From Mizuhopecten yessoensis (lineage: Eukaryota), in contig NW_018480057.1 of NCBI RefSeq assembly GCF_002113885.1, forward strand, positions 115,208-179,207: a DNA stretch of 64,000 bases. The letters are read 5' to 3'. Below, piece after piece: positions 1,994-61,400 of this stretch (its first letter is position 1; the number at the start of each line of letters is the position of its first letter). Both the position numbers and the translations under genes were made by a program. The notes below the pieces were generated by a model. That model did no database searches, had not been told where the DNA came from, and worked only from the letters and a program-made list of their open reading frames with translations.

Positions 1994-2381
1994 CCCCCCC
2001 TAGTATGTGCTGGCATTTCTTTTCCGTTCGAGAGATTCAAGTAGGGCTTTCTGTCCGGTGTGCCGATTGTTACTGTGCATCTGTGGTACCGTAGACAGGA
2101 ACAGCCGCCACAGCAGACACATACATGGCCCAAAGTTTGAATAAAACTTGAACTAGTAATATACTGTATTTTCTCTGTCCAGAGTTAATCTCCATCACCC
2201 ATGAACGCGGGATAGTCGCGGAGGGCTTATCAATGTAAAGCCGGCGGATCTACCTTGATATAGCCGGCGTTTCTTCTGCGATCATCTGCGGCTACGAGCG
2301 ACAGGTATTAAAATTTGTCGCTCGGCGGGCGACTGAGTACCAAATCACCTGACGCGTACTGTACTTAATATCAGAACATAC

Positions 2382-5300
2382 CTGGAAGAGATCTAATTGT
2401 GTGCGTCCTTCTATGTTGACGACTTTGTTTTCACGCTTGCCCATCTGTTTACTCTGGAAAGTTGACTCCTTTATAACTGACTTGATGTCTCGGATACGTC
2501 CTAGGAATGTGAAGTCCTTCACTTTGAGATGATTGGCCCGATTGATAAGGTAAGGGGTGTCAAAGTTCTGGATATTATAACCAGTGATGATGTCTGGGTC
2601 CACCTCTCGTACAAATGCTGCCCATCTCTGTGATAAATAAGTGTTCAATGTTTTAAAGTTATATTCCAGCAGTGAAAAGGGACTAATAACCGAATGGTTA
2701 ATCAAGTCAAAAAATCTACTTGAAGCCAGGGCTCCAAAAGTAAAGTACTTCTATCAATGATTGGGTGTCCTTCCTATTATTTTATTGTGGTTGATACCCC
2801 TAACAAGTCCTGGGATGGACTACATATTTTTTTGAATATCCCTAAATTGAATGTGCAATAATCAAATTCATCCCACATTATAATTTATTCTGTATTCAAT
2901 TTATACTGTATCATAATGTAAATAATATCAGTACATATGAAATTTATTCTTAAATATGTTGGGACAACCTCCTTTGTCCATATTGACAGGGTACAAGAAG
3001 CAGAGTAAGAACTAGCACTAATATGTCCGCCTCCTTCATATAACACAGAATGTGAGCCTATGACTTGGGCACAGGTGTTGAGTATGACCGCTATCTACTG
3101 CATTGCCTTGTTCGTGAGACAGAGGACTCTAATCAAGACTTGCACAGATATATTCAGCATAACCTAGCTCTAACATGTTTACCTGCTTCATGTAACACTG
3201 AATCTGAGCCTACAGTATGACCAGGACACAGGTGTTGAATATGACTTACCTCTAACATGTGGGCAACCTTCATGTAACAGTAAATATAATCTGAGCCTAC
3301 AGTATGACCAGGTCACAGGTGTTAAATATGACTTAGCTCTAACATGTTTACCTGCTTCATGTAACACTGAATCTGAACCTACAGATGACCAGGACACAGG
3401 TGTTGAATATGGCTTATCTCTAACATGTGGGCAACCTTCACGTGACAGAAATCAATATCACCATCACTTTGAGTCCGCCTTAGGCTAAGCTCAAACTCAA
3501 TTTCCCAGACTCAATAGTCATACTCAGCTTGAGTCAACTCAACATGGTAGTATAAGGTCTGAGAGCAGTGTACCTATGACCTTGGTGCAGGTATCGAGTA
3601 TACCATACCTCTAACATGTCAGCTTCCTTCATGTGACACAGGACTTGTGATCCTATGACTGGAGCACAGGTGTTGAGGGTGAACACATTCCTAATAAATG
3701 GTTCATGGTCACCCTGCCTGATCACCATGTTTGCAATCTGTATTACCGGATCCTTGTTTGCCTCCGGGAAGATTCCTGTCATTAACAACATAAAATGAAT
3801 TGTAATTTACTACTTGAAATGTACCTATGTTGTCCAACTGGTTATTCTTTAATTTCTAATATATATCACATACACATTATGATATACTTCAGTGAGAAAA
3901 CAAAAAATTAAGTCACTTCTCAAGATGTGTTCTAAGATGAAAATTTAAAAAAAAATATTGTTATCGGTGCATTAAAGTTAAAACTTTCCAGATATCACAG
4001 CCAGCCGTATATCAGCCATTTTTCCAGGTACTTCTATTTAATCCTGTATTACAACTCTTTTTGCATTTCCATTCAGGCAAAATGAAATGACCAATATCAG
4101 TTGATAAAACTTGTTTCAGAATTATCTTAAAATAAATCCTAAATTAGTCATATGAGAAGAGAAAGAGCGAATGGTTTAAGTAATGAATAGGGGGCAATTA
4201 ACAGATCTAGAAACGATGCACGAAAATTCACCACTTCTGAAAAGGCCCCATTTTAGTAACTTTTAGCTACTTCATCATAGTAGAAGTGCCTAGAGTGTTT
4301 AAAAGAACATAGAATTAAAAAAATTACCAACTATCTGCAAATAAAGCGAGAAAACTGACCAAAAGTGACTTCAGATATCTAGTTTACTAAGGCCAAATAA
4401 AATTAATTACTAGGTTCTCGGGCCAATATTTTCAAAAGAGATGCAGCATAACTCCATTTTACATGGCAAAAACGATACGAGGGCCATTTTTTTTTATTGT
4501 GTAGTTTATAAAACGTTCATTGTTGGCATTACCTTGTCTTTTTATAGTTGTGTATAGACCCGTCATAGAGCAAGCCTCCGAAAATCCCCCCACGATGTTC
4601 CAGACGAGAATCACGAACCCCCCATTCCTTATTTGTACCGAAATGAGCGCCATTTGTACACAAGACTAATAAGTCATAATCATTTCAACGCTTGCCTGTA
4701 TATCAATCCTTATCTTTATTCAAATGTTTTCGGGACTAGGATGACTAACAAGTAAAAACGACATGCGGACCAATTTTCCGGATTTTTTTAAAGACAGCGG
4801 CTGGCGCATTCACATTTTTTTTTTTATTACTTTCACGATAAAATCGGCAATGCCGTGCCCTAAAAAACATGTGCCCAGGCCTGAGAACCAAGTAATCAAA
4901 TTTGTATCTAAAGGCATACCAAACTTTATGTTATATCCGGGTAATATCCGACAGTATTCTATAGCTGATCAACTTACCCTTCCTACCAGCACATTCTATG
5001 TCGTAACTGAGGATCCTTAGGGGCGCTACCTTCGACCATTCTCCATCTGGAGCATGAGATATGAAGTCTTCCCAAGACACGTCCAGCTCAACCTGGCACC
5101 GTGAAGTGTGTGGAGGGTGACGGATGTCGGAGTTTGACGAGTTCCTTCGGTCTCGCAGCTGGTATTTACTGGCAGGAACTTCAATCCAGTTACAGCCAAC
5201 CACATCACTGTCTACCATGAAGCTAGAACACAGACAGAAATCACGACTGTAAATGACCCACCATTATTTACGATCAACACAAAAACCTTTTAAAATATCT

Positions 5301-8300
5301 ATCTCTTTTTTTGGTTTGTTGAAGGTTTTATGTTTTAACAATAAATTCATACGAATGTGAATTTTCAATTGAAAAATCGTTGTTATCACTTCCAATCAGT
5401 AAGTCTCTTGTCCTATTCAAGTGAAACCTTCAAATTCTCCCTCAATACCATCTTAAAGTGTGTTGAATAATTCTTCATATTATAGGAACGGCACCCTTGT
5501 TGCATTTTATAGCAAGTTATTTCTTAATAATTTAACCCTCCCTGCAGCAACCTTACTGGTAATCCAATCAAATCAATGTTTGTAAAAGAAAGTAAAGGTG
5601 TTTATTTTGAAAACTGAGCATTAATAAGGCCTTGCGTGATTGGTCCATACTGTTAAAGATAACCAAAACATGGGTAGAAAATGGAAACATTTCGTTTGGA
5701 ACACAATGTTTTAACTGCTGACACGGCCAGTACTCTGAATATAAACCAACCATGCTGACTTTTATCCAACCGTGCTGACTTTGAAATGAAAATGCTGACT
5801 TTTAAATGATCATGCTGACTTTAAAACGACAATGCTGAGTATAACCTAACCATGGTAATTTAAAGTGAATTTCAGTAAAAAGTCAGCATGGGTGCGTTAA
5901 ACATTACCATGATATGAGGAAAGTCAGCATTTTGTTGCACTGGTGACTACAGAATTCTGAATTGCATCAGACTTGGGTAATATAACTGGACATTTCTGAA
6001 TATAACTTGACCACTCTGAATTTTTACTGCAATTCACTTTATATTACCAGTGGATAGCTTAAATTCAGGAGGGATGGCTAAAATTACATATTCTCTAATG
6101 CAGCAAGACAAAGGATTTGTAAAAGAAACTGAAGACTTAATAGTTTTGTGAAACAAACAAATTTCAAAATTCATATTAGGAATCCCAAAATCAAATATAA
6201 GTTTCGATGAATGAATATCATATTTATTTAGAAATATTTCTTTCATCACTCTTAATATAATCTTAAACTTAAATTGCCAAATAATTAACATAAAATAATT
6301 TTGTCACAGATATCCACCAATAAATTCTTACCGAACTTCAAAGTCTATGTTGCTTTCATATGACTGGTATCCATACTGTAAATAGCCTGGGCAAGTAAAT
6401 CCCTGCTCCAACAATCGCTTGGCTGGCGCAATTAAACGAGGAAGGGAAACGGTGATCTTCAGAAATGGCACTTTTCTGTTGCCATGGTACCCATAGATGC
6501 CTAAATAGATTTGAAACCCAATCAGTCAACAATCAAAGTAATTCATTCACTTACTCACCTTTTTAATTAATTTTCTAGCAACTTATGTGCAAAAGGTTTT
6601 TGCAAAATATTTTTGTGTTCATGTATTGTTGTACTAAAATACATTTTACAACATGGGTGGTGCATACAAATGAGAACAACTCACTTTCCTTGTTGACCAT
6701 GTCGACAGCCAGCACAGCATTCTGTAAACCCTCTCGGTTAGACCTCAGGTCCTTCATAACAACAGTGTCGAGTTCCTTCTGTAAACACAATGTAAAACCC
6801 TAGTAACACAGTAGTATTAAAATATTGCAATGTGTTGTGTCTGACTCTGAATTATCAATTGATTAATATAAAATATTTTTATTTTCATGCTAATAACAAA
6901 ATCTACATATTTTTATTTCTTTCCTTAAAAAAAGTATAAATGAATTGTCAGCAAATTTCTGCCAAATGTTAGTTCCATTCTTCACTTGATTATTTTTGAA
7001 AATTTAAACATCGTTTTGATGTTGAAAAAACAAACAAGCATGTCATCATTAGAAACAAGAGCCCCAATGGGCCTGCATCGCTCACCTGGTTTTAATCTCA
7101 CACTTGTAATATTGAAAGTGGACTAAAATACAGCTACAGGCAAAATATCAGTGTTTGATTCATAAGAACCAATTAAAAGATTTAAACATATGAAGCATGT
7201 GACCTTGAATGTCGAACACGGACATCAGGTTGAACAGAGTTTATAGTCTTCCATCCCAGCATGCTTCTGGCAAAATATCATTACCTTGGACATTTTGGTT
7301 ATACAGAACAAATCATTTTAAGATTTAACATATATTGACCACTGTGACATTGAGTATGGGCAAAGGTCATTCACTTGGTAGTCCTTCATCCCAGCATGTT
7401 AATGGCCAAATATCATCACCCTTGGCCTTTTGCTTATATTAAGAAGAAGTCTTTTAAAGGTTTTTTAACATATTTGACCCCTGTGACCTTAAATATATGT
7501 CAAGGTCATTCATTTGAACAAACTTGGTAGTCCTTCATCCCAGCATGTTACTGGCATTATCCTAGGCCTTTTGGTTATTGAGAAGAAGCCATTTGAAGAT
7601 GTTAAGACATTTGACCCCTGTGACCTTGAAAGTTGGTCAAGGTCATTCATTTGAACAAACTTGGTAGCCCTTCATCCCACAGGCCAAATATTAGCAGAGC
7701 TGCCAACCTTAGAGATTAAGAAATAGTAATCTGCGATCGCTTTTTTACAAACATGTATTCATTACCTTTTATTGTTTTTCTCTAAACGTCTGAATGGATA
7801 ATTTCCTTTTTTTCCTAGGAGAATTCACATTGAATTAACTCCAGCCTATCTCGAGAATCGATGCAAACGCACGAGTGTATCTGATTTGCGATTATAATAC
7901 TGAAAACGGACATCGGGACCGGATTACGGCGAAACTAACAAAAAAACAGAAAAATTCCGGATTTTAAAAAAAAAATCGTAATTTTACTTGGAAAATCGTA
8001 CTAGCGTAATTCAGACCTCAAAATCATAATAATTACGCCTAAATCGTAAGAGTTGGCAGCTCTGTATCAGTACCCTGGGTCTGTTGGTTATTGAGAAGAA
8101 GTCATTAGAAGATTTTAACATATGTTACCCCTGTGACCTTGAAAGTGGGTCAAGGTCATTCATTTGAACACACTTGGTAGCCCTTCATTCCAGCATGCTA
8201 CAGGCCCAATATCAGTACCCTGGGCCTTTCGGTTATTGAGAAGAAGTTGTTTAAAGTAAAATATTGACGTGGGACGGACGACGCACCATGGCATATATTG

Positions 8301-11300
8301 ACCACTGTGACATTGAGTATGGGCAAAGGTCATTCACTTGGTAGTCCTTCATCCCAGCATGTTAATGGCCAAATATCATCACCCTTGGCCTTTTGCTTAT
8401 ATTAAGAAGAAGTCTTTTAAAGGTTTTTTAACATATTTGACCCCTGTGACCTTGAATATATGTCAAGGTCATTCATTTGAACAAACTTGGTAGTCCTTCA
8501 TCCCAGCATGTTACTGGCATTATCCTAGGCCTTTTGGTTATTGAGAAGAAACCATTTGAAGATTTTAAGACATTTGACCCCTGTGACCTTGAAAGTTGGT
8601 CAAGGTCATTCATTTGAACAAACTTGGTAGCCCTTCATCCCATAGGCCAAATATCAGCAGAGCTGCCAACCTTAGAGATTAAGAAATAGTAATCTGCGAT
8701 CGCTTTTTTACAAACATGTATTCATTACCTTTTATTGTTTTTCTCTAAATGTCTGAATGGATAATTTCCTTTTTTTTCTAGGAGAAACGTCTTCTTGCCC
8801 GTCCAGTTTGACACGTTTTTCCGCCATTTTACTTCATCTACAAACGTCCTTTTCACATTGAATTAACTCCAGCCTATCTCGAGAATCGATGCAAACGCAC
8901 GTGTGTATCTGATTTGCGATTATAATACTGAAAACGGACATCGGGACCGGATTACGGCGAAACTAACAAAAAAACAGAAAAATTCCGGATTTTAAAAAAA
9001 AATCGTAATTTTACTTGGAAAATCGTACTAGCGTAATTCAGACCTCAAAATCATAATAATTACGCCTAAATCGTAAGAGTTGGCAGCTCTGTATCAGTAC
9101 CCTGGGTCTGTTGGTTATTGAGAAGAAGTCATTAGAAGATTTTAACATATGTTACCCCTGTGACCTTGAAAGTGGGTCAAGGTCATTCATTTGAACACAC
9201 TTGGTAGCCCTTCATTCCAGCATGCTACAGGCCCAATATCAGTACCCTGGGCCTTTCGGTTATTGAGAAGAAGTTGTTTAAAGTAAAATATTGATGTGGG
9301 ACGGACGACGCACCATGGCATAAGCTCACTTGGCCTTCTGGCAGGTGAGCTAAAAATACAATATGGTACACATGTACAGCATTATAAAAAGTTGGCTACG
9401 TATTTGTAATACATTGGAATTCAGATAGCGTGCACTAATTAGTATTTATATTGCTGTACTTATTTTGATTGGCAGTACATGTCAACAGCCCTATAAAACA
9501 CCATTTACGTGAATTTTATTCAAATCCAGATATCTGCAAGATGTTTTAACTTCAGATAGACTATCAAATATGGAACAAATAAAAAAACTTTATATCTCAC
9601 AAAACATAAATATAATGGTGACAAACAGCACCCAGTACAACAGCATTACCCTGAAAGCATCACAATCCTGACTCTTAAAGCCTGGCTGAGCAGGGACGAA
9701 GAAGTAAGGTGCATAGCCGTGCATGTGGGCAAGTACACAGTGTCCCTCCATTGTCACACCATACATCCTAATGATAGGTACTGGCCCGCTCGTACATCCA
9801 GGCATACCTGGCATGTGTTTACCTGTAAACACAAAGCTTGATTTAGCCATTTGTAGTCTCTGTACACATCATAGTTCTTAATTACTACTGAAAATATATT
9901 TTCAATGTAGATCTGCAAACATAAGGACCAAAATAAAGAGGGAATATATATTCAGATTTTTACTTTTTTGACGTGCAATAAAATATCCTGTTTAACACAA
10001 TGAGAATTTCGGTTACCATGTTTTGCTTAAAAAACAAATAAAAGACAAAAGCATGTTAATGGTAGCATACTTTTCGGTTACTGAAACAGGAAACCAAGCT
10101 CAAGATCTCTCACCAACATAATAATCCACATCCATCTGCTGAAAGGTCACACTGTCTTTTCGGGGGTCAAGAGTTGGAGCCAGAGGTCGAGACCACTTTG
10201 TACTGGTTGCCACATTGTCTGGACCATCACCTAAAACAAAACATGGAGGACTTGTAATGTTTCCAGTCAGACCTCGACTATGTAGGTGTAAACTTCTTTT
10301 ATTAGAATTTCAACAAAATAATTAGAGGTGTGTATCGCAAGGGTTATGACGATCGATACGTATCACGATACATGGGTCACGATATGATACGTATCGCGAT
10401 ACTTGTCACAACTTTCTGTACAAATATGTTACTATAGTTTTTCTTAATTTGAAACTTTTAACCTTGATATGAAATAAATATAAAGTGTTTGTATACCATG
10501 CTCAATTTATTTGTTTTGAAATGTCATCTATCTCATAAATTGTAAAGCATTTCTTTTTTTGATTATCCTACATAAACACATTCATTCAGATGATGAATTA
10601 TGTTGGGAAAACTGATCACACTAGCGCCTAATCGTTTATAATGGTAAGTTGGGTGTTGTCCCTTCGAGTAGGAGATCTGTTGACACCTGACCTGGTATGG
10701 GCAGAGCAGGTGCTGTCGGTAATATTAAATGTTGGTTTTACAAAAAATATGTTTTAAGAGAAACTTTGATCCTATTGATGGGGTACAATTTCAATTTTTC
10801 CTGAAATATACATCAGTTTTCCGAGTGTCTGCAAATCCAACTGGACCCGACAGCAATATTAGAGGAGTGAGTTTAGTTAAAGGCAGTCACTCACCAATCA
10901 GATATCAACGAGGACTGCTAACAGCTGAATTATGGCGACATAAAAACACCAAACTCTTAAGATTTCAGCTTTTCCTTCTTTTAGGAGATTGTTTTCAGTC
11001 CCTTCTAATTATCTTTTAAACTGTAATTGACATCATTGCCGATTCAAACCGTATTTATGTGTCCCTGTGAGTTCCTGCAAGTACTAAATATTTCTGAAAA
11101 TGTCTGAATTATTGCCGATAAATGGTCGCAATACAGGACTGGTAACCAGTCTAAAAGAGCGGTAACTGGCCGTATATAACGTTTTTAAAGTAACGCGATA
11201 CTATCGGCGAATGCCACGATGCATCGGCAATCAAGAAATGATACGATTCAACGATGCATCGTCGAATCGCTACACCGCTAAAAAATAATATAAAACCCAT

Positions 11301-12580
11301 TGTTCTTTTAGACTCGAAAAAAGGATTCTTAAAAAGCCAGTCAACTTAATTTGTGCCTGTTCATCAACAGCAACATTGACTGAAAGATGTCTGCATGAGG
11401 AATGTTAAATTTGTTACACCTAGAACTTTGTGACAGTGATACACTAATAAGAACGCCCAGTGTTCAAACTTAACGGTACGTCAAAAGACAGTCGCTATAG
11501 AAAATGCTGTCTATTAATTGGCATTTATTTAGTTCATAGACCAAGCTTGTAGGGATCTTGTAAATATTTAGATATATGCATCTGTGTTTTTGTTACCTAA
11601 ATTTTACAACAGCCTGTTCCTTTATGAATTGGGAAAATATAGCACTATTTGTATTAAAATCGGGAATAGATTCCTCATTTTTTTGATATTTTGAGAAAAT
11701 AAGGCACTTTTTAGCTAAGGGAAACAGCCTGTATTTGGCAGAAAAACTGTGCATCATGAGAAAATGTATTGTCACAGCTCTAAAGGAAAGATTTTTCTGA
11801 TACAACAACTATTTGTAAACTTTAACCTGCAACATCTGCCATGTCAACATCTCCCTTCATTTCATTTTCCATTTCATCAAACATTGCCAGCTCATCCTCA
11901 AAACCTGCTGGGTCCTCATCGTCAAAGTCATTTCTGAAATAGTTATATCTGTATTAGTATAATTTATTAAATCAATAATGTACAGCTCTATGCCGTCTCA
12001 GTTACATGATAAGTAAAAAAAATATGTATAGACTGTATCATCAAATGATAAAACACAGCACACATATACAAGCACAAGTCATACACATCCAAATGAAAAC
12101 TACTGAGAGAACACAGCATATATACATACAAGTCATACACAGCTAAATAAACCATATTTTCTTGATAAATTATGAACTAAGATATGTTGAGAAAAGGATA
12201 TTTTTTAATTACTTTTATTGCATAATGATTTTATTTCCTAAAATGAGTGGATGAATATTATCTGCATAATGAACTCAGTTGTGGAATTCATTAAAACAAA
12301 ATTTTGGTTCCCAATTGGGTATTTTAAATGCACAAACTGTTTCTACTGGGAATTGAACTTAAACAGTACCCAATACACTCCCGGAAGTGCCAATATTGGT
12401 TTTTAACAATTATGATTTTGGTAATTTGTCCTGATCATTTCATATTTATAAGGCAAATTCAATTTAGCTATCACTTTTGACAGATTCAACAGTTGAATTT
12501 AAAACTATTTATATACAATTAAGACATACAACAATGTACCTGGCTTTCTTTGCGGGTGGTCCCAACTTTTTAGCATCCAT
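2382..12580 (-). CDS. POLD1: DNA polymerase delta catalytic subunit, 5' part (N-terminal and 3'-5' exonuclease domains); incomplete at the 3' end
   Basis: Coding exons (minus): 12580-12540 ([14 protein letters not shown]), 11933-11827 ([12 protein letters not shown]), 10230-10114 ([14 protein letters not shown]), 9822-9650 ([22 protein letters not shown]), 6778-6685, 6500-6332 ([10 protein letters not shown]), 5222-4978 ([27 protein letters not shown], ExoI), 3775-3609 ([15 protein letters not shown]), 2627-2382 ([17 protein letters not shown], ExoII). All introns are GT-AG and phases are consistent. Confidence 0.97.
3014..3608 (-). repeat. Degenerate ~80-bp tandem repeats derived from the 3' end and donor of POLD1 exon 3775-3609
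   Basis: Units of the form ctctaacatg..ttcatgtaacac..atgac..cacaggtgttga match exon sequence 3609-3676. Confidence 0.75.
4387..4910. mobile_element. MITE with imperfect terminal inverted repeats
   Basis: aattactaggttctcgggcc (left) versus ggcctgagaaccaagtaatc (right, reverse complementary). No coding capacity. Confidence 0.5.
7695..8064. mobile_element. hAT-like MITE, copy 1 (internally deleted)
   Basis: TIR cagagctgccaac / gttggcagctctg; flanks tattag / tatcag. Confidence 0.8.
8658..9091. mobile_element. hAT-like MITE, copy 2, with 6-bp TSD
   Basis: Perfect 13-bp TIR cagagctgccaac. TSD tatcag on both sides. The empty site (aatatcagtacc) is present in neighbouring host units. Confidence 0.85.
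10323..11280. mobile_element. hAT-like non-autonomous element
   Basis: Termini tagaggtgt / acaccgcta, subterminal cgatac/gtatcg repeats, near-8-bp TSD aaaataat (one-base slip in the A-run). Confidence 0.65.
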
Positions 12581-14310: not shown

Positions 14311-14631
14311 CTTACCTTAGCTTTCAACTTACGTATTTTCCTGAAAACGCGGGAGTGAGAAACTCTCGTGTTGTCTCGCGTTACTATATGAATCGTTAAG
14401 TATACATTAGTACAGAGATAGAACTTTTGCATATTCTTTCATTGATTTATGAGCTAATTTTTCATAGTTGTTATATATGGCACCATTTTAACCATTTACC
14501 ACATATGTATAATATCGGGGAAAGGACAGCATTCGGGGACCTTTTACGTGTTTGAGGTCAACTTCCGGTTGTACTTTCACTTTCTAGGCAACTGAACTAT
14601 CTGTTGACGTGTGAAATATCTTGGAGCTAAA
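14311..14631. promoter_or_regulatory. Putative bidirectional promoter shared by POLD1 (non-coding first exon) and the BPL-like gene
   Basis: Minus-strand donor AAG|GTAAGC at 14316/14315 could pair with the acceptor at 12614-12615 just above the POLD1 ATG exon. The region is locally CpG-rich, with an E2F-like GCGGGA at 14349-14354 and an ETS motif ACTTCCGG at 14561-14568. The BPL-like ATG is at 14632. Confidence 0.65.
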
Positions 14632-17600
14632 ATGGCACTAGATACCTTTGATGTAGCCGAATTCCAAAAGCATTTGACTGCAAATGAATTTGGAAAGAAA
14701 TTCACATATAAAGATATAACAGAGACAACGATGGATGATGCATTGAAGGCTGCAAATGAAGGCAAATAATTTATCATTAGTCTGTTAGTATGACTCGTGT
14801 ACTGTCGCCCATATTAGTTTTGTCTTATGTGTATAGATATTTTTAACCGAAAATTGTTAGTAGATTGGCATTGCTATCATTGTCATATGGTGTGTTTTAT
14901 TATACAGCTAAGGAATTTGAGGGGGAAATACTGCCTGCTAATGTCAGGCAAGCTTAAAACATGTAGGTTTTCCAGCGATGCAGTAATTAACCCGGGGACC
15001 CGCTCACTATATAGTTCAGCAAAATCGAGTTTGGCCAGTAGCTGGATGGGTGATCAACCGCACGTACATTTGGTGGCAGCTTATAGTGACCCTGCTGTAT
15101 CATGTAAGGCCAGTTCTCAGACAGACCCAGTGGTATTGGAAGGTGCATTGGGGGGACTTCGACACAGGATTCCCCAGGCCAAGACTCAGGATGATACTTC
15201 TCTGAGTGGAAATAATGTAATAATAAAAAAGCTGAGGTAAACCAGGATTTAAACCTGGGTCAGTGGGACCTCCAAACTCTTAAGACAGATGCTCTAACCA
15301 ATCAAGCTACCTCAGCACTGAGGTCACACAATCGACCCTGTGAGTCCAATTCCACTATACACATCGATATATAGATTAATTCATTGTATATATATATATA
15401 TATAGTAGGTTTTAACAACGCTCTTATCAGCTCTTATAATATAATGCAATATACTAAAAATTTCAATTTACCGGGGTAGTATTATTTAGATCTCAAAAGC
15501 AAATTTCTACACCTGACTTATACTTCAGATGCATCTGCTTGAAAACTATTCCACATGTTAACAGTTCTTTGTGCTTTTGAAAGGTTCTGAACATTAGTGG
15601 ATGATTGAACCCAGTGTTAAATAGTCAAATGGAGTTTGACAAGGTTCATATATCTCGGAAAGGATTGGCATAGCTCTATCATGTCACCTCTTAAATCGGC
15701 TGAGGGCCATGAACGGTAAATTTAGATTCTGCTTTATTTAAAAGCTCTTGATTGAATGGACTTGAAACTTCAATGACCTAAATTAAAAGAGCTCATATGG
15801 ATCCTACATGTATTGTGAATCTTTTTCGTTAGAATATCACACACGACACTTCATCTTATGTAATTTTAAATTTAAAACAGGAGCACCTAACGGGACTGCC
15901 ATTATGGCTGAGCAACAATCTAAAGCTAGAGGAATGAAGAATCGTAAGTGGAATGCACAGTACACTGGAAACATATACATCTCCTATGTCTACCACAGAG
16001 AGGCTGTTTTTGAGGTATCATATACATATATCTTTTCTTAACAATATGTATTTTTCCAAAATTGGTTCATGTTACTTGAAAATGTCATGGATAAAAAATA
16101 ACTTGATTATAACTCATGAATCTTATAAATGGTGTTTGTAATTTTTTTTTTTTAAATCAGTCGTTAGAAATTGCTCTACAAATCTCAAATCATAGAGTTT
16201 AACAATGCATCTAAAATAACATATAAAAGTTGGTTCAAAACATTTTTATGTGTGTTGTGATACTGTGAAGAATAAAGGATTCTTAATGTTTGAAATCCTT
16301 CAGTCACGTTTTCATGTTTTAGGCTACTAGAAAAGCTGTTTTAAGGACAATATATCAATGTGTTTGAGCTATTTTTGAATAGGGAAGTTATCTGTAGAAA
16401 ATCAGACCACTTTAAACCAGAGTGGAATTTCAAAATATGGACCAATAACAAGCACCTGTGTTACCTAAAGGCCATGTCACACCGAGCCGCGAGTGCACAG
16501 CGTTGTTAAATTTCACAGAGCGCCGTGAGATCGCAGTAAAAATTGATATTTTTCATGAAGATGTCGATGTCACAGCATTCTCACGGCGACCTTGGCGTTT
16601 CTACGGAGCTCCATGGCGTTCTTCCACGTTCCTACAGAGTTCTAGGTAGCAGTGAACAGTAGAAATGGCCCGACTCTGATAAACAAGGCACATGTCGAGG
16701 AAATGTAAACACAGCGGATTTACCCTACACAACACATGTATACATGTATATATATTTGTAAACTGCATTACATTTACAATACATATAAAGTACTGAGAAG
16801 TGTATAAACCTCTTTCTTCTATGTATGTCACTTGTGTGAAAACCATGGTTACATCAAAAAATGCCAAAAATTACTATTTTTAACCCAAAATTTGACCCCG
16901 CAACTAGTAATTTTTTTCCTAAGCTCTGTCTGAAATTAAAGATTACCTTCCTGGTTGCAGAATTATCTGGGTCCCAGTAAAGTTGTAAAACTTGCTTTTT
17001 TGCAATTTTGCGTCGTGTGCTGTTGTCAAAATTGTACCTCCTGTAAAGCTAGCTTTTCATGTGTACGCACCCCTTCGTATTATGGCCAAAATTTTATTCT
17101 CGAACCAAAGAAATCTTCTTTCTTTTTTACAAATGTGAAGCTCACATAGCCCACTTCATCATGCTTATACCAATTTTAGTACAGTTTTATTTTTATATTT
17201 TTTTTACATATCATTATACAGGGGTTAGCCATTTAACAAAATTATCACCCATGGCCACAACCCTCTACTGTATACTGCTACCCTAGTTGGCGATTGTCTG
17301 CACTCTAATGGCGCTCTCACGGTGCCTCCACTGCGTGCATCAAGTTGTCACGGCGCTGTATAAGCGCAGTAGAGACGCAGTGTCATCTCAGAGAACGCCA
17401 TGCAAGCGCCACCGATAACCATTGCACTACGACCTCTGTGCGCGCCTGCAGCGATCCTGTGGCGCTGCTATGGCGACCTCACGGCAATCCCACTGCGCTC
17501 TTATCAGAACGCCAAGCGACGGCGTTTTTTTGGGCATGCTCAAAGTGCGCGCCGTCGCTCCGCGTTCTATGCGATCCCACCGCGTTCACTGGCGATGCTT

Positions 17601-20600
17601 GCGATTCCACTGCACGCAGATTGGCGTTCTGCATTTTTCTTGGACGCCCTGGCATTGCAGCCCTAGTATTACAGGGCTTTTACACACACCTGTCTGCCTT
17701 CACAGATAAGGAGATACTTTAGGAGAACACACAGTAACAAACACTTGAGCAGAGACGCTCAAACACTGCACTCCTTACTGTGTTGAATATAATGTCTTGC
17801 TAGAACAATGTTCTGGAGATTACATTGGGCACTAGAAAAAAAATCAAAATAGTATCAGGGTTAGACACAAACCTTTTTTTGCTTGTTATTCCACAGGACT
17901 AGTTAACTAGATTATTTACTAGTCCTACGTCAATGTAATGAGTCCAAGATTTCCTGATAAGGAAACATCTCGATCTACAGCACGAAACATCAAGTAATCG
18001 ACTGTAGGGGACTTAAAATAACTACTGCCATAGAAATATGGTTTAAGGAAAAAAATTAGGATTGTTTTTACAATTTTCATGAAATACATCTTATTTTAAG
18101 CAGTTTTCTAAAATTTTAAAAGGAATATCTTTATCATTATAATATTTTTCACAAGTCAAAAGGACCATTACGGTTGGGTGTTTCACTAGTCCTTGCTGAA
18201 ATCTACTAGTCCAGGACTAGTGTTAGTGTCGAATCTTGAGTATCCTTTTGACTTTTCCAGATCTATACAAATTTATAATGCTGTCCATTGACAAATGAAA
18301 TTTTGTATTTTATAGACACACAATACTTGTGAAAAATATTGTTAAAAGAAATTCTTCCATGGCAGTCCAACATGCAGATGACATGAACCTGATGTTTTCA
18401 GGATCCAAGGAAGGATGAAAATATGATGGAGGTCGCAGGAGCACTGGCTGTTTATATGACACTTGCTGACTTGGGTGTGGAGGGTATCAACATCAAATGG
18501 CTGAATGATATCTGGGTCAGAGGTCATAAGATGGCAGGAATATTGGTAGAGGATAAAGGACCTTTACCTTGTAAGTATAGGTCTACAGTGATTGTGCTTT
18601 TAGTTTGGAAGATACAGGAATGTTACAATGTAGGTACTGTATACTGGGATTTATTTACTGTCGCACTATTTACTGATGTTGCTCAGTAAGTGAAAGTTAA
18701 GTTTTTGTGATTTAAAATTTTGTGATTTTCCCGAGGTTGGAGTCTAATATATGATAACTTGATAAGTGTATAGATTTAATCTTCAAATTTACCTGGTGTC
18801 ATGAAAACTGCTCACCACCTATAAGATGTGATGTATGTATCTGTTGTGCCTTTAATCATTTAAATGACCTTGACCTACTTTCAAGGTCACAGGGGTCAAA
18901 TATGTTAAAAATTTCAAACAACAATATCATAAGAACAATTCGGACTAGAGTCATGATACTGGGGTATGTTATGTAGACCAGCAGTGCTAATCTTTTTCTT
19001 ACAGTAATGAGGTTAAATGTCAACTTTTAGTGCTAGTCGGGGGTCAAAGGTCAACATGGGTTAAAAGCTTTAACATTCCTCTTCTCAAGTTCCATAAGGC
19101 CTAGGGGCATGATATTTGGCCAGTAGGTACCTGGGATGGAATGCTATAGACTTTCCTCATTAAAATGACCTTGATCTACTTTCAAGGTCGCAGGGGTCAG
19201 ATATGTTAAAAACTTCAAATAACAATATCTTAAGAACCATTAGGTCATGATACCCGGGTATGTTATGTAGACCAGCTGTGTAAATTGTTTTCTTTATTAC
19301 AGTAATGAGGTCAAAGGTCAACGTTAAGTGCTAGCTGGAGTCAAAGGTTAACGTGGATTAAAAGCTTTAAAATTAAAATTTCACAAATTTCAAACAACAA
19401 TATCTTCAGAACCGTTGAAGAGATGTTAAAATGTCTTGTGTTCTAGTTACCAAATTTAGTCTGAAGTTACCTGTACTGCAAGTATGTTAGTTTCATGTAA
19501 CAAAAGAAAAAGGTGAGCGATACAGGCCCTCTGGGCCTCTTGTTTAATGTTTGGTTGTTTCACCATTTGCATTTTTTCTTTATGAAGCAGTTAAAAGTTT
19601 CATGCCACTTTTTGAAGAAAAGTTTACCAAAGTTTCCTTTTATTTCCCAACCAGTTGATAAAACAAAGCGTTTGTGTATCGTTGGTATTGGTGTGAATGT
19701 GAATGCTGATGTGCGTCGACACCCTGAGCTACACACGATATCTACCAGTGCCCGTAGTCAGCTGAACGGCAGTATTGTGAACCGAGAGCACTTCCTGGCA
19801 AAAATGAGCAAGTACCTAGAGGAGTGCATGTCCCTGACACAGGAGGACTTGTTCCAGAATGCCATCAAATATCAACTGTTCCAGCTCAATGAGCCAGTCA
19901 GGATTCACAGTATGTTAAATCAAAAAGTGACTGATGGAACCCTGGTGGAATTTCTCGACAACTGGTCAATCAAACTAAAAGGTATCACAGAACTTTATAT
20001 ACTAATGAAGTTATCAGTGGCTACATTGATTGAAAAGAAAAAGAAAACAAGACTTTGATGTTAAGTTGTAATTGCATAGTTAGGTGAATGCTTATTTAAG
20101 TGGAATGATGATAAGTTATGTTGGAAAATCCAAGAGTGAATACACTTAGTAAAATTGACTCTTAATGCATAAAAATGTGTACTGGGTATCAGTACTTCAA
20201 ATTCAAGTTTCAAAATACAAATGTAAACTATTAACAAGGTAAAGAAACATTAACAAGACATGATGTAATGTAATTTACATGTAAGCAACATGTTGATAAC
20301 AGTCACAGGATCACCACAGCACAAAACCAAATTACAAAATGAGGGCATTGAGAGCAAGTGTATCTATGTAAACTTCTATAACATTTTTTACCTGAATATT
20401 TTAATAAGTAATTTATTAGGCAGATCTGTACACAAACATTATGGAATTTGGCCTGTTAACTGTTTCATTTCTGTGCACTAAATTCTTTAAATATCCTTAA
20501 ATTTAAAATTGCACAGCAGCTGCAAATTAACGTTCTATCGTCTGATTGGTCAATCGGTTTCTGTGAAAAAACTGTTCATTAAATATCATCATATTTTACA

Positions 20601-23600
20601 CTTATAAAAATATCCTGGTTAAAATAAAAAGCACTGACACAATAATCAAAGAATCTGTTTACTTGCTATATGTTGTATACAGATGAGAGTGGTGAGGTAT
20701 GGACAGCAATGTCTGACCACTATTCCATCCGACCATGTGCGACCTCTACAGTGTATGTATACAACGGGAAGATGGCATGTCCCTGGAGCTCAGTAGCCAT
20801 GCTGAAGTGTCTGTCTTCCCTTGTAAACATCACTCACACAACCATCTCCCTGCTCAATGACACCAAACTGAAGGAAGGTCAGTCCAGTATGGTTTTGTAT
20901 ACATAATGGCCTCCGATTTGTTACAAGGTTTTTTGTTCAGACCACTGTAGACATATTGATGTTATTGTATTTGAACAGGAAAATTTATTCTGATCATTCT
21001 ATTTCGGTCAACCGACTGCCTCTATCAGGAGTTAAAATTGCGGGATCATCATGTGATGTACCTGTCAAATGTTTATACACGCACTGTTAATTTGTTTGTA
21101 AACAAACATTAGGCCTAGAAGTGTAAACAATACAAACTGTACATGTACAAAGAAACTATATTGTTTACATCAAGAGCCGAAAGTAGAAAATACTGAGCAA
21201 AAAAATGTGTTATTTTTCTCTCTTTCTTTGTACACCGAAACAGACTTGTATAATGTAATTAATCCTTCATTAATTATATTTTAACCACCAGGGCGATATC
21301 GATGTCAAAAATAAAAAGGTATTTTTCCCATCCCCCCCCCCCCCCCCCCCAANTAAAATTGAGGTTTATGCTGTATACCTAATACAACATTTGAAGGATA
21401 ATTAATGGAAATACCTTAACACCATTTCACTTCTCTGTTTGTGAACATTTCCTTCACACACCCCTCAAATTGCCAACTCAAATATAATGTCAAAACTTCA
21501 TTTAAAATTGGTGGCAGTATAACAAGGATTTACTGTATTATATTGAAAATATAAGGAAGTCTTTGTGGTTACAGGACTGTGGAAAAAAGATGCTGCTTTA
21601 TTGGTCATTGGAGAGGTTTCCATGGATACTCAAGATATCGACTCTGCTCATCAATCATTTACAGATATACTGAACTTCATAGAAAATGGTGGAGTAGTGA
21701 TGATGATGGGAAATGTGTCCGGATTTTTTACCTCCTACCTACAGTCTGGGTCATCTACAGGTATACTCACGTTGTTTACCTCCTACCTACAGTCTGGGTT
21801 ATCTACAGGTATACCCTTGTTGTTTACCTCCTACCTACAGTCTGGGTTATCTACAGGTATACCCTTGTTGTTTACCTCCTACCTACAGTCTGGGTTATCT
21901 ACAGGTATACCCTTGTTGTTTACCTCCTACCTACAGTCTGGGTCCTATACAGGCATACCCTCGTTGTTTACCTCCTACATACAGTCTGGGTCATCTACAG
22001 GAAAAATCTTGTTGTTTACCTCCTACCTACAGTCTTGGTCATCTACAGGTATACCCTCGTTGTTTTCCTCCTACCTACAGTCTGAGTAATCCTCAGGTAT
22101 ATCGTCGTTGTTAACCTTCTACCTACAGTCTGGGACATCTACAGGTAAAATCTTGTTGTTTACCTCCTACCTACAGTCTGGGTCATCTACAGGAAAAATC
22201 TTGTTGTTTACCTCCTACCTACAATCTGAGTAATCCTCAGGTATATCCTCGTTGTTAACCTTCTACCTACAGTCTGGGTCATCTACAGGTATACCCTCGT
22301 TGTTTTCCTCCTATCTACAGTCTGAGTAATCCTCAGGTATATCCTCGTTGTTAACCTTCTACCTACAGTCTGGGTCATCTACAGGTAAAATCTTGTTGTT
22401 TACCTCCTACCTACAATCTGAGTAATCCTCAGGTATATCCTCGTTGTTTACCTCCTACCTACAGTCTGGGTCATCTACAGATATACTCTCGTTGTTTACC
22501 TCCTATATACCTACAGTCTGGGTCATCTACAGGTATACCCTCGTTGTTTTCCTCCTACCTACAGTCTGAGTAATCCTCAGGTATATCCTCGTTGTTAACC
22601 TCCTACATACAGTCTGGGTCATCTACAGGAAAAATCTTGTTGTTTACCTCCTACCTACAGTCTGGGTATCCACAGGTATACCCTCGTTGTTTACCTCCTA
22701 TCTACAGTCTGGGTCGTCTACAGGTATACTCTCGTTGTTTACCTCCTACCTACAGTCTGGGTCGTCTACAGGTATACTCTCGTTGTTTACCTCCTACCTA
22801 CAGTCTGGGTCATCTACAGGTAAAATCTTGTTGTTTACCTCCTACCTACAGTCTTGGTCATCTACAGGTATACCCTCGTTGTTTACCTCCTACCTACAGT
22901 CGGGGTCATCTACAGGTAAAATCTTATTGTTTACCTCCTCCCTATAGTCTGGGTCATCTACAGGTAAAATCTTCTTGTTTACCTCCTACCTACAGTCTGG
23001 GTCATCTCCAGGTAAAATCTTATTGTTTACCTCCTTCCTACAGTCTGGGTCATCTACAAGTATACTCTCGTTTTTTACCTCCTACCTACAGTCTGGGTCA
23101 TGTACAGGTATACCCTTGTTGTTTACCTCCTACCTACAGTCTGGGCCATGTACAGGTATACCCTTGTTGTTTACCTCCTACCTACAGTCTTGGTCATCTA
23201 CAGGTATTCCCTCGTTGTTTACCTCCTACCTACAGTCAGGGCCATCTACAGATATACTCTCGTTGTTTACCTCCTACCTATAGTCTGGGTCATCTACCGG
23301 TAAAATCTTGTTGTTTACCTCCTACCTATAGTCTGGGTCATCTACCGGTAAAATCTTGTTGTTTACCTCCTACCTATAGTCTGGGTCATCTACATGTAAA
23401 ATCTTGTTGTTTACCTCCTACCTATAGTCTGGGTCATCTACCGGTAAAATCTTGTTGTTTACCTCCTACCTACAATCTGAGTAATCCTCAGGTATATCCT
23501 CGTTGTTAACCTCCTACATACAGTCTGGGTCATCTACAGGAAAAATCTTGTTGTTTACCTCCTACCTATAGTCTGGGTCATCTACAGGTAAAATCTTATT

Positions 23601-25128
23601 GTTTCCCTCCTACCTACAGTCTGGGTCCTCTACAGGGATACCCTCTTTGTTTACCTCCTACCGACAGTCTGGGTCATGTACAGGTATACCCTTGTTGTTT
23701 ACCTCCTACCTACAGTCTGGTCATCTACAAGTATACTCTCGTTGTTTGCCTCCTACCTACAGTCTGGGCCATCTACAGGTAAAATCTTATTGTTTCCCTC
23801 CTACCTACAGTCTGGGTCCTCTACAGGTAAAATCTTATTGTTTACCTCCTTCCTACAGTCTGGGTCATCTACAAGTATACTCTCGTTTTTTACCTCCTAC
23901 CTACAGTCTGGGTCATGTACAGGTATACCCTTGTTGTTTACCTCCTACCTACAGTCTTGGTCATCTACAGGTATTCCCTCGTTGTTTACCTCCTACCTAC
24001 AGTCAGGGCCATCTACAGATATACTCTCGTTGTTTATCTCCTATATACCTACAGTCTGGGTCATCTACAGGTATACTCTCGTTGTTTACCTCCTGCCTAC
24101 AGTCTGGGTCATCTACAGGTAAAATCTTCTTGTTTACCTCCTACCTACAGTCTGGGTCCTCTACACGTATACCCTCGTTGTTTACCTCCTACCTACACTC
24201 TGGGTCATCTACAAGTATACTCTCGTTGTTTACCTCCTACCTACAGTCTGGGTCATCTACAGGTATACTGATTCTCATTGATTAAACAACAAAGTTACAG
24301 CCAGGATTCCTTATTGACCACAAGCTTACTGTTAAGGAAATAGACTAGTATTAATATATCAATATGGTCGGCTATAAACCAGAGGCGTAGGTTCATTACC
24401 CATATACATGCAGTAACTAGTCATGAGCAAACAACCGCTTCATAAAACACAGGAAGCCCTATAGTCTTAATATATTGTCAGTAGCTAGGCATTTGCTACA
24501 AAGGTCACAAAAATAAATTTCCTTGACCTATATTCAAGCTCATGGGGGTCGAAACTGTAAAACCACAATTTGAAAATGAAATGAGTCGTGATATTTGGCC
24601 AGTAGAAAGCTGAAATGAAGTGCTATGAAGTTTGCAAAAAGAAATACCACTTAAATCAGGTGAGCTAGACAAATTGGACCTCTTGTTAAGATTATAAGCT
24701 CCAGCATTTCATCATCAAGGACAAAATTTACTGAAAATGATATCTTAATTTCAGAAACCACCTGTAGCTTGCAGCCAACGCATGGAGGATCTGCCGATAC
24801 TGCTGTGCCAGGTCGCTTGGTTAGCCTGAACTTGAAGTGTGGAGACCTTGGTCAGGTATTCGGGTACAGTATCAACAAGGAAAATATCACATTCCAGGAA
24901 ACAACAGGACAGTCCCCAGAAGTTCTTGCTTGCTATGGAAATGGTGAGGCAGCTGTGCTTGTTTCTACATATGGCAAGGGCTCCTGTGTGTTGATAGGTT
25001 TCAATGCTGAGATAACTTACACGGAAGACTGTGTTAGCTTGTCGGATGCAGAGCTGAATAGCCTGCGAGACACTGTGTTTGTAAGGGACGAACTTATGCT
25101 CTGTATCCTTAAAAGGTTTGGATTGTGA
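14632..25128 (+). CDS. Biotin-protein ligase-like protein (504 aa): BirA-like catalytic domain + SH3-like C domain + C-terminal BPL_N (GATase-like) domain
   Basis: Exons 14632-14761 (GC donor), 15881-16014, 18402-18570, 19655-19981, 20683-20877, 21575-21760 and 24755-25128 join in frame (1515 nt including TGA). BPL/BirA motifs: GAPNGTAIMAEQQSKARG..RKW, IKWLNDIWVRGHKMAGILVE, IVGIGVNVN. BPL_N-like motifs follow: VYVYNG..WKKDAALLVI..NFIENGG..EVLACY..AAVLVSTYGKGSCVLIG..ILKRFGL*. Confidence 0.88.
14962..15080 (+). mobile_element. LTR-like remnant carrying a 5S rRNA internal-control-region-like sequence (Cassandra/Helenus-like)
   Basis: 15013-15055 aligns without gaps to the 5S A-box/IE/C-box (about 29/43 against the remembered animal 5S sequence). 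It is followed by ..GTACA and a PBS-like ttTGGTGGCAGC. Confidence 0.5.
15216..15362 (-). mobile_element. tRNA-like solo-LTR-type repeat
   Basis: Minus strand reads TGTATAG..TAGCTTGATTGGTTAGAGC..GGTTTAAATCC..TTACA. Confidence 0.45.
16468..17679. mobile_element. PIF/Harbinger-like non-autonomous element with GC-rich ends
   Basis: Imperfect TIR aaggccatgtcaca / tattacagggcttt, TA-rich flanks, and CpG-rich subterminal blocks unlike the host intron. Confidence 0.45.
17856..18238. mobile_element. hAT-like MITE with 5-bp TSD
   Basis: TIR cagggttagacac / gtgtcgaatcttg. AGTAT directly flanks both ends. Subterminal ggactagt/actagtcc motifs. Confidence 0.7.
18820..19543 (-). mobile_element. HINE-like element fragment with an internal ~310-bp duplication
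   Basis: Ends in ggtgagcgatacaggccctctgggcctcttgtt, the reverse complement of the family 5' end seen at 7054 and 36157. Confidence 0.55.
21725..24268 (+). repeat. 48-bp minisatellite (~53 copies) spanning the exon-6/intron-6 boundary of the BPL-like gene
   Basis: Unit ttgtttacctcctacctacagtctgggtcatctacaggtatactctcg. The first copy is the end of exon 6. Confidence 0.97.
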
Positions 25129-58495: not shown

Positions 58496-61400
58496 ATGGC
58501 GAGCTACAGTGAGGTAATTCGTGTTGTAAATGAACAATCCAGTAGGATTAAATGAATGATCCGTTTGTGATCGTCCGCGCGCTTTCCTTTTTTTAGGGTA
58601 GTTTGTTTCATGTGGGATTGTGAAAAGATTTCAAGGATAGTGTAAGGGTCGTTTCAGATTCATTGGCGGTCTGCTATGTTGTAATTTCCGATTTAAATAA
58701 ACATGAAATGTATTCTAATCACTGAAAGTAGAGTTGAAATAAGATAGTGAACCAAACTGTTCTGGTGTCGAAACTGGTTCAACCAAAAAAATGTAGGATG
58801 TTCTTAGTAGTGGGGATTATAGAAATATCAAAGATGCAGGAGGAGGCATTTGTATTATCTATAGGTTTTCGACCTCCTTCTACCATTTGGAAAAAAATAA
58901 CATTATGCTCGGTAGAAAATTTGCCTTAGCACAAGGGGTTATTTCTGAGGGCTTCAATTTTGGCGATATTTAACCCAAAATTAAATTTTCACAAATCAAA
59001 TATTATAGATATGAAGGAACTGGATTTTCCTGGTGTTTTAGCACATAGAAAGGACTCGCCATGTGATGTGTCACAAAGTCAAATAAATAGGCTTTATGCA
59101 TATATATTGAGCACTGATAAGTATATTTTGTTAAACCACAAAATTAGATTAGATTTGTTATCCAAGTCTGTGGTTAAACCGATCATTATCGAAACTATAT
59201 AAAGATATGTGATATAATCATTTTTCAAGCATCATATTCTTTATGTATATGAATTGTCACATTTTCCATAAGCATGCTATTTCATGACTTCATTATGGTA
59301 ATTAGCAGGAGCTCCGAGGCTTTGCCGAGGGTCTTCTGCTCAACATTTCATCCCGAGGGTTTGAATCACCTTATCCATATACCTCACATCCGGGATGGAT
59401 TCTATTTCAACAGCTGTTCTTCTTCGAAAGACAGCCATCTTGGATTTTGACAGTGAAGATTTGTTATGGCTGCTTCTCAGGAAGTACCTGAGGGAACGTT
59501 CTCAAATTTTATATGTAGGTTTCCCTTTGTCCGTAGTTGTACAGGGCAACTTTTGAGACTGATCAGTTAAACAACATGGCCGACAGGCAGCCATCTTGGA
59601 TTTTGACAGTGAAGGTTTGTTATGGCTATTACTCAGGAAGTACTGGAGAGATCTTTCTTAGTATTTTTGTGTAGTTTCCCCTTGGTATGAAGTTATACAT
59701 ATTTTTGTATGAGACTGATCGAATAAAAAAATCTTTGATTTTGACAGTTAAGGTTTGTTGGTGCTATTTCCCAGGAAATACTGGAGGGTTCTTTCTCAAA
59801 TTCTATATGCAGGTTCCCCATTTTCCTTTATAGTTCATGTTTACTTTTGAAACTGATCAGTTAAACAAAATGGCCTATCGACAGCCATCTTCGATTTTTG
59901 ACATTGACGGTTTGTTAGTACTATTTCTCAGGAATAACTTGAGGGATCTTTCTCAAATTTGATATGTATAGGTTCCCCTTGATCCCTCGTTGTACATGTT
60001 ATATTTTGAGACTGATCATAAAAACAAAATGGCGAAAGGAAGAACTAAACAGATCTTTCTCATATTGCAATGATCGATTCTATTTGTTTCACATTAAGTA
60101 CTACTAGTAAATATGTGAAATGACAAACTCACTTGGAAGGTTGGCTTTCATACACATCAGTATTAAGTTTAAATCAAAAGTTACTTCAAGGTGCATTTAC
60201 TGTTAACATGACTCGATCAAACAGATAAGAAGGAAAGAAGAGAAAAGATCGAACTGACAAAGAACTTAAATGAAAATTTAAAATGGTGGGCGCCAAGATC
60301 CCTCTGAAATCTCTTGTTTCTGTACTTACAGCATCACCAAGGTTTATTCAATACAAATCACAATAACAATCAATAGCAATAACCCAAAAACAGATTGATG
60401 GTAAATAAAGAATTAGGTATTGTTTATTCAGAGGCGATGTGATGATAAAAACAGGTCTCCTTACACAACTCTGAGGATGGGTTTGACAATAGAAACATGG
60501 TTTCAGACCATCTGAGCATAGGTTTGACAATGGTTACATGGTTTCAGATCATCTGAGCATGGGTTTGACAATGGTTACATGGTTTCAGACCATTTGAGGA
60601 TGGTTTTCACAATGGTTACATGGTTTCATGCCATCTGAACATGCGTTTGACAATGGTTGCATGGTTTCAGACCATCTGAGAATTGGTTTGACAATGGTTT
60701 CATGGTTTCAGACCATCTGTGGATGGGTTTGACAATGGTTATATGGTTTCAGATCATCTGAGGATGGGTTTGACAATGATTACATGGTTTCAGACCATCT
60801 GAACATGTGTTTGACAATGGTTACATTGTTTCATGCCATCTGGGGATTGGTTTGATAATGGTTACATGGTTTCTGACCATCTGAGGATGGGGTTGACAAT
60901 GGTTACATGGGTTCAGACCATCTGAGGATTGCTTTGACAATGGTTACATGGGTTCAGACCATCTGAGGACTGGTTTGACAATGGTTACATTGTTTCATGC
61001 CATCTGGGGATTAGTTTTACAATGGTTACATGGTTCCAGACTATCTGAACATGCGTTTGACAATGGTTACATGGTTTCAGATCATCTGAGCATGGGTTTG
61101 ACAATGGTTATCTGGTTTCAGATCATCTGAGGATGGGTTTGACAATGGTTAAATGGTTTCAGACCATCTGTGGATGGGTTTGACAATGGTTACATGGTTT
61201 CAGACCATCTGAGCATGGGTTTGACAATGGTTATCTGGTTTCAGATCATCTGAGCATGGGTCTGACAATGGTTACATGGTTTCAGACCATCTGTGGATGG
61301 GTTTGACAATGGTTACATGGTTTCAGACCATCTGAGGATGGTTTACACAATGGTTACATGGTTTCGTGCCATCTGAACATGCGTTTGACAATGGTTACAT

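What the first reader, a model, noticed from the sequence alone, without database searches (positions are those of the whole stretch)
14632..25128. Biotin-ligase-like protein with reversed (permuted) domain order: BirA-like catalytic + SH3-like + C-terminal BPL_N
Seen: seven exons join into one 504-aa ORF. The N-terminal portion carries BPL catalytic motifs and the SH3-like C domain. The C-terminal ~230 aa (STVYVYNG..LWKKDAALLVI..FIENGG..GKGSCVLIG..LNSLRDTVFVRDELMLCILKRFGL*) resembles the BPL_N/class-I-GATase-like region. The domain junction lies inside one exon (20683-20877), so this is not two genes stitched together. Established: in animal HLCS and fungal Bpl1 the BPL_N region precedes the catalytic domain, which sits at the C-terminus. 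Inference: this is a second, rearranged BPL paralog rather than the canonical HLCS. The catalytic motifs look more like bacterial BirA (GAPxGT..AEQQ, KMAGILVE, GIGVNVN, TS..VNRE.FLA) than HLCS, so it may be a chimera or an independent fusion with a different function.
Basis: partly seen in the sequence, partly recalled or inferred. Interest (0 to 1): 0.9.

Follow-up and report, generated by a model that had tools for sequence, protein, structure and literature searches.

The report
Mollusc biotin ligase with reversed domains
Scallops, clams and snails carry an undescribed biotin-ligase-like gene whose two domains are joined in the opposite order to the usual animal enzyme; it was probably built from a bacterial ligase, which suggests evolution paired these two domains twice.

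Summary
Confirmed. Seven exons encode a 504-aa protein identical to Yesso scallop LOC110443006 X1 ('uncharacterized'). Residues 1-272 are a minimal (class I) biotin protein ligase with SH3-like cap (Z 29.6 to Pyrococcus BPL); 273-504 are a BPL_N/class-I GATase fold (Pfam above cut-off, Z 16.6). Described eukaryotic ligases put BPL_N first. Two junctions, including the one into the boundary exon, have RNA reads; related scallops give full-length intron-free contigs. The gene spans bivalves and gastropods, with shared introns, POLD1 synteny and dN/dS 0.07-0.2. It looks like an independent fusion, not a permuted HLCS: the catalytic half lacks the eukaryotic PDGNS end and groups with Tepidiformales BirA (98/97; no eukaryotic ligase in the tree). 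An unidentified animal has an ancestral-like copy with intact GRGRxG loop and Cys-His-Glu triad; the scallop type lost the triad and the loop's R118 but kept all adenylation residues. Best reading: a second, probably active biotin ligase with a non-catalytic partner-binding domain. Activity, target and a separate scallop HLCS are untested. No paper found. This scan's only related notes are on this same DNA.

The parts
14632..14761 (+). exon 1, aa 1-44; start of ligase domain incl. T32-T33-M34 (E. coli S89-T90-N91 position); GC donor
   Evidence: same intron position with GT donor in Patella, Ostrea, Mercenaria
15881..16014 (+). exon 2, aa 44-88
   Evidence: (BirA models E 4e-6)
15916..15951 (+). 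biotin-binding loop Q56-W67; A59 at E. coli G115, M62 at R118, N64 at G120; Q56, R60, G61, W67 kept
   Evidence: (alignment to Aquifex, Klebsiella BirA)
18402..18570 (+). exon 3, aa 89-145; KWLND motif (18495-18509) and catalytic Lys131 (18528-18530)
   Evidence: E 9e-11; junction to exon 4
19655..19981 (+). exon 4, aa 145-254; GIGxNVN strand (19684-19704), adenylate loop, start of SH3-like cap
20683..20877 (+). exon 5, aa 254-319; end of cap (R270-P271 at ~20730-20735) runs directly into strand 1 of BPL_N
   Evidence: (junction 19981>20683 in 4 studies)
21575..21760 (+). exon 6, aa 319-381; GATase-fold core; Gly364 (21709-21711) at the nucleophile-Cys position
24755..25128 (+). exon 7, aa 381-504 + stop; Asn464/Glu466 (25003-25011) at the His-x-Glu position
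21727..24269 (+). 48-bp minisatellite (~53 copies) filling intron 6; unit = end of exon 6 plus its donor
   Evidence: sequence
2292..12580 (-). POLD1 (DNA polymerase delta) exons, head-to-head with the gene; same arrangement in Aplysia; 5' end inferred from sequence

Best explanation
An ancient molluscan gene made by fusing a bacterial-type class I biotin ligase (closest sampled kin: Tepidiformales, Chloroflexota) to a BPL_N/GATase-fold domain placed at its C-terminus, independently of the BPL_N-first fusion in HLCS/Bpl1. [quoted passage not shown] No targeting peptide is evident, so cytosolic. Shown: exon structure, both folds and their order, conservation, purifying selection, motif states. 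Inferred: bacterial origin, activity, substrate, location, role of the second domain.
For: Fold: class I BPL, Z 29.6; BPL_N TM 0.71-0.75; GATase Z 16.6. K120, N123, D124, K131, G134, E138, G157, N159, T33 invariant in 23/23 mollusc rows. dN/dS 0.07-0.12 ligase, 0.13-0.20 BPL_N. Careful tree: animal clade 100/96, animal + Tepidiformales 98/97. Shared with Tepidiformales: T-M at 33-34 (10/10 vs 20/198 other prokaryotes) and cap ending in RP (8 of 9 rows that reach it vs 8/180); no PDGN in any mollusc row, whereas animal and plant BPLs end so (PMC3199775 file 9). Ancestral-like copy with the same order and introns, intact loop and triad. Whole-protein pTM 0.89 suggests fixed domain packing. Natural ligases with Ala at G115 (Sulfolobales, Methanobrevibacter) or Gln/Ser at R118 (Bacteroidetes, Campylobacter) exist, so the changed loop is compatible with ligation.
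Against: No eukaryotic BPL sequence could be fetched, so the tree cannot exclude a eukaryotic source and is unrooted. R118 is replaced in 23/23 and G120 in 22/23 scallop-type proteins, a motif called essential for biotin binding (PMC12582158). No acceptor is known; organisms usually need only one BPL (PMC3199775). Expression is low. No BPL_N gene was found beside any of 162 prokaryotic birA loci, so the source of the second domain is open.
Confidence: 0.55

Rival explanations
1. Neofunctionalised adenylating enzyme: the rewritten loop either leaks biotinyl-AMP (a natural BioID-like proximity labeller aimed by the C-terminal domain) or accepts a different carboxylic acid or acceptor.
For: Both E. 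coli positions known to weaken adenylate retention (G115, R118; PMC9120650) are changed family-wide: Ala 21/23, never Arg; Ser, as in TurboID, occurs in three members; the change followed the fusion (type A intact) and coincides with loss of the GATase triad and gain of an invariant D-x-R-R after the GxGxNxN strand.
Against: Ordinary prokaryotic ligases carry each substitution singly; T33, Q56, W67 and the glycine-rich strand that contact biotin/adenine are kept; constant leakage would be costly.
Confidence: 0.2
2. Biotin or biotinyl-AMP binding sensor/scaffold that no longer transfers biotin to proteins.
For: Loop degeneration and dead GATase triad; low expression.
Against: Catalytic Lys, KWxND and cap are invariant over bivalves and gastropods and the ligase half is the more constrained.
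Confidence: 0.1
3. True permutation of a duplicated host HLCS (domains swapped), with later divergence.
For: Best structural matches of the C-terminal half include fungal Bpl1 and chordate HLCS clusters (TM 0.75, 0.74, against 0.71 for bacterial BPL_N); T-T-M also occurs in vertebrate HLCS.
Against: Catalytic half has prokaryotic GIGxNVN and cap end, lacks PDGNS; every non-mollusc hit was prokaryotic; Tepidiformales grouping. The BPL_N half alone may still be HLCS-derived.
Confidence: 0.08
4. It is the molluscs' only (replacement) holocarboxylase synthetase.
For: Single conserved gene on a housekeeping-type head-to-head locus with POLD1; no canonical HLCS was seen in any search here.
Against: Searches were not built to find HLCS; fast divergence and a degenerate loop are unlike an essential sole ligase; from my own knowledge molluscan proteomes carry ordinary 'biotin--protein ligase' entries (not verified).
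Confidence: 0.07

Closest known systems
Class III BPL (human HLCS, yeast Bpl1)
   Same: Contains the same two modules: BPL catalytic + cap and a GATase-fold BPL_N domain.
   Different: Order reversed; ~500 aa instead of 650-770; no long linker or extra folded region; prokaryote-type catalytic half without PDGNS; loop and triad degenerate in the scallop type (yeast keeps GRGRxG and C89/H215/E217).
Class I BPL (Pyrococcus, Aquifex, M. tuberculosis; Tepidiforma BirA)
   Same: Catalytic domain + cap superpose over their full length (Z 29.6); no DNA-binding domain; catalytic residues kept.
   Different: Extra 230-aa C-terminal BPL_N; GRGRxG replaced by ARGx(K/R)(D/N); seven-exon animal gene.
Stand-alone BPL_N proteins (bacteria; Trichoplax rickettsia-derived copies, PMC3641634)
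   Same: Same fold and family; precedent for bacterial BPL_N entering an animal genome and gaining introns.
   Different: Those carry no ligase domain; here BPL_N is fused behind one.
Engineered promiscuous ligases BioID (R118G), BioID2 (Aquifex R40G), TurboID (R118S)
   Same: Arg at the same loop position is absent (one search aligns M62 with Aquifex R40).
   Different: Natural, long-conserved change with other residues; leakage not shown.

Membership tests
Biotin protein ligase (BPL/BirA) | BPL_LplA_LipB catalytic fold plus SH3-like cap | tested here: met
   (Pfam BPL_C itself did not hit)
Biotin protein ligase (BPL/BirA) | Catalytic Lys, KWPND, loop Trp, GxGxN strand | tested here: met
   scallop has KWLND
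Biotin protein ligase (BPL/BirA) | GRGRxG biotin-binding loop | tested here: not met
   A-R-G-M-K-N in scallop, never Arg at R118 in 23 rows; met in the type A copy
Biotin protein ligase (BPL/BirA) | Forms biotinyl-AMP and biotinylates BCCP | not testable with these tools
   needs assay
Class III BPL / HLCS | BPL_N domain N-terminal to the catalytic domain | tested here: not met
   BPL_N at 276+ after catalytic 32-159
Class III BPL / HLCS | Eukaryotic cap signature (H/Q)PDGNS | tested here: not met
Class III BPL / HLCS | Phylogenetic placement with eukaryotic BPLs | not testable with these tools
   no eukaryotic BPL sequence could be fetched by reference
Class II BirA | N-terminal winged-helix DNA-binding domain | tested here: not met
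   ligase fold starts at residue ~1-9; no HTH_11
BPL_N (PF09825) | Profile match and class I GATase fold | tested here: met
   26.1 bits vs cut-off 24.2; Potamilus 1e-10; type A 3e-31
Active class I glutamine amidotransferase | Cys-His-Glu triad | tested here: not met
   Cys 0/17, His 1/17, Glu 13/17 in scallop type; intact in type A
Lipoate ligase (LplA/LipB) | LplA/LipB profile or structure as best match | tested here: not met
   lipoate ligases E 0.27-0.6 vs BPL 1e-21

The most novel reading that the evidence does not exclude
Molluscs turned a horizontally acquired bacterial biotin ligase into a new protein-modifying enzyme: a natural proximity-labelling (adenylate-leaking) or non-biotin acyl ligase aimed at non-carboxylase targets by a GATase-fold domain.
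Probability: 0.2. Interest if true: 0.92.

Novelty: new variant of a known kind. Interest (0 to 1): 0.72.

Why it matters
The accepted scheme has three BPL architectures, all ending in the catalytic domain and cap (PMC12582158), and usually one ligase per organism (PMC3199775). This is a fourth architecture, conserved since the bivalve-gastropod split. If the fusion is independent, BPL_N and the ligase were joined twice in opposite orders, which argues for a real functional link and gives a compact, well-modelled system, with natural triad-intact and triad-dead versions, to test the open question of what the GATase-like domain of HLCS does (it carries biotin-unresponsive disease mutations). 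The natural loop variants are also candidates for proximity-labelling enzymes, and the gene is a candidate ancient bacterium-to-mollusc transfer.

Tried and rejected
Annotation artefact or two stitched genes: rejected. Contamination: rejected (conserved introns, synteny). Pseudogene: rejected. C-terminal half as GH42 trimerisation/ThuA/DUF1355 domain: same fold class, but BPL_N is the best profile and Atlas match and type A is unambiguous. Lipoate ligase: rejected. Operon origin: no BPL_N neighbour in 162 prokaryotic loci. C-terminal profile found only molluscs; it was too variable for a genome scan; type A BPL_N exon found nothing in plasmids or viral contigs. Single exons 1, 5, 6 gave no useful family hit. 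Ten paper searches found no description, and gene ids are absent from the library. The host of type A could not be identified.

Full report
Observation. The seven exons named in 'parts' give 504 codons and a stop; intron 1 has a GC donor. Exon by exon, exons 2-7 are 100% identical to Mizuhopecten yessoensis LOC110443006 isoform X2, and the 504-aa isoform X1 (P0046) chains exactly onto all seven. The gene is thus annotated, but only as 'uncharacterized' or 'BirA'. RNA reads from four studies support junctions 3>4 and 4>5 and cover exons 5 and 6 at depth 1-4. Five intron-free assemblies from related scallops hold the complete 494-501-aa frame.

Method note. I searched the window's model exon by exon by reference and left out the step of joining exons myself. 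Whole-protein searches and folding used the database record P0046 and other tool-returned proteins by id. Type A exons were not joined either; its single-exon called proteins went into the tree. The N at 21353 was left as is.

Anatomy. The AlphaFold2 model (pLDDT 89, pTM 0.89) superposes residues 9-272 on the whole of Pyrococcus BPL (Z 29.6, rmsd 1.9; TMt 0.87): catalytic domain and cap, no DNA-binding domain. Residues 272-504, folded alone, are a class I GATase fold (Z 16.6 to TM1158). Their nearest Atlas models are BPL_N proteins: fungal Bpl1 0.75, chordate HLCS 0.74, bacterial stand-alone 0.71. Pfam passes both cut-offs in this order. The linker is essentially absent and lies in exon 5.

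Family. Relatives with the same order occur in scallops, oysters, Solemya, Mercenaria, Potamilus, limpets, abalone, Gigantopelta, Pomacea, Aplysia, Elysia and pulmonates; Tegillarca and Pinctada have truncated models. Six intron positions and phases are shared by scallop, Patella, Ostrea and Mercenaria (the sixth in a poorly aligned stretch), and POLD1 lies head-to-head in scallop and Aplysia. dN/dS is 0.07-0.12 (ligase) and 0.13-0.20 (BPL_N). No named non-mollusc animal was found, but the searches were lossy (one search missed members of its own alignment), so the range is a minimum.

Motifs. All adenylation residues are invariant in 23 mollusc rows; the loop is rewritten: Ala at G115 (21/23; Gly in 207/208 prokaryotes), never Arg at R118 (173/208), Asp/Asn at G120 (register). 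These are the positions whose mutation leaks the adenylate in E. coli (PMC9120650). However, a published alignment shows ordinary ligases with Ala at 115 or Gln/Ser at 118 (PMC3199775 file 9), so the loop alone does not show a new activity. The GATase Cys is absent in 17/17 and His in 16/17.

An ancestral-like copy. Three intron-rich animal contigs in two metagenome assemblies (L168-L170, host unidentified) encode the same order with introns at matching positions (intron 3 absent), but an intact GRGRQG loop and a canonical BPL_N with Cys and His-x-Glu. Its last exon aligns to the scallop-type C-terminus (E 1e-5). In the tree it is sister to all scallop-type proteins (100/96). So the fusion came first and both degenerations later; whether type A is a retained paralog or the ortholog in another lineage is open.

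Origin. All non-mollusc hits are prokaryotic, at about 25-35% identity. The animal clade groups with a clade whose neighbouring genes are Tepidiforma (98/97) and shares two signatures with it (T-M; cap ending in RP), while lacking the PDGNS end of animal and plant ligases. Rows left out: most of the weaker prokaryotic hits and near-duplicates; no eukaryotic BPL could be included and the tree is unrooted, so transfer from Chloroflexota is an inference, not a tested donor. The source of BPL_N (host HLCS or bacterial) is unresolved.

Mechanism and comparison. [quoted passage not shown] It works like a BPL and contains BPL_N, but fails the defining order of class III and the canonical loop, so it is filed as a new variant. 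Rivals are listed with odds. No paper in the library describes it.

Verdict. Real, conserved, apparently undescribed fourth BPL architecture; function inferred, not shown. Interest 0.72.

Noticed in passing
window 21727-24269: 48-bp (16-codon) minisatellite, ~53 copies, made of the exon-6 end and its splice donor; offers many in-frame alternative donors. RNA use not tested.
   Followed up: partly
window 14330-14632: Probable ~200-300-bp bidirectional promoter between POLD1 (likely non-coding first exon ending near 14333 on the minus strand) and this gene, with an ETS-type ACTTCCGG near 14560; inferred from sequence.
   Followed up: no
L166 1-4184 (-) and 10001-19816 (+): Ostrea edulis has two divergently oriented copies, both 490 aa.
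   Followed up: no
L168-L170: Type A gene occurs on two contigs of one sample and one of another (about 85-96% DNA identity): alleles, paralogs or close species; it lacks intron 3.
   Followed up: partly
P0046/P0028/P0047: RefSeq lists isoforms of 504, 453 (starting at Met52, lacking exon 1) and 409 aa.
   Followed up: no
window 16640-17430, 18820-19610: Intronic dispersed repeats attract hundreds of RNA reads from other loci; not expression of this gene.
   Followed up: no
prokaryotic loci: About 35 bacterial BirA sequences naturally have Thr, Ala or Ser at the R118 position.
   Followed up: partly
window 60470-61733: 41-bp tandem array, about 31 copies.
   Followed up: no
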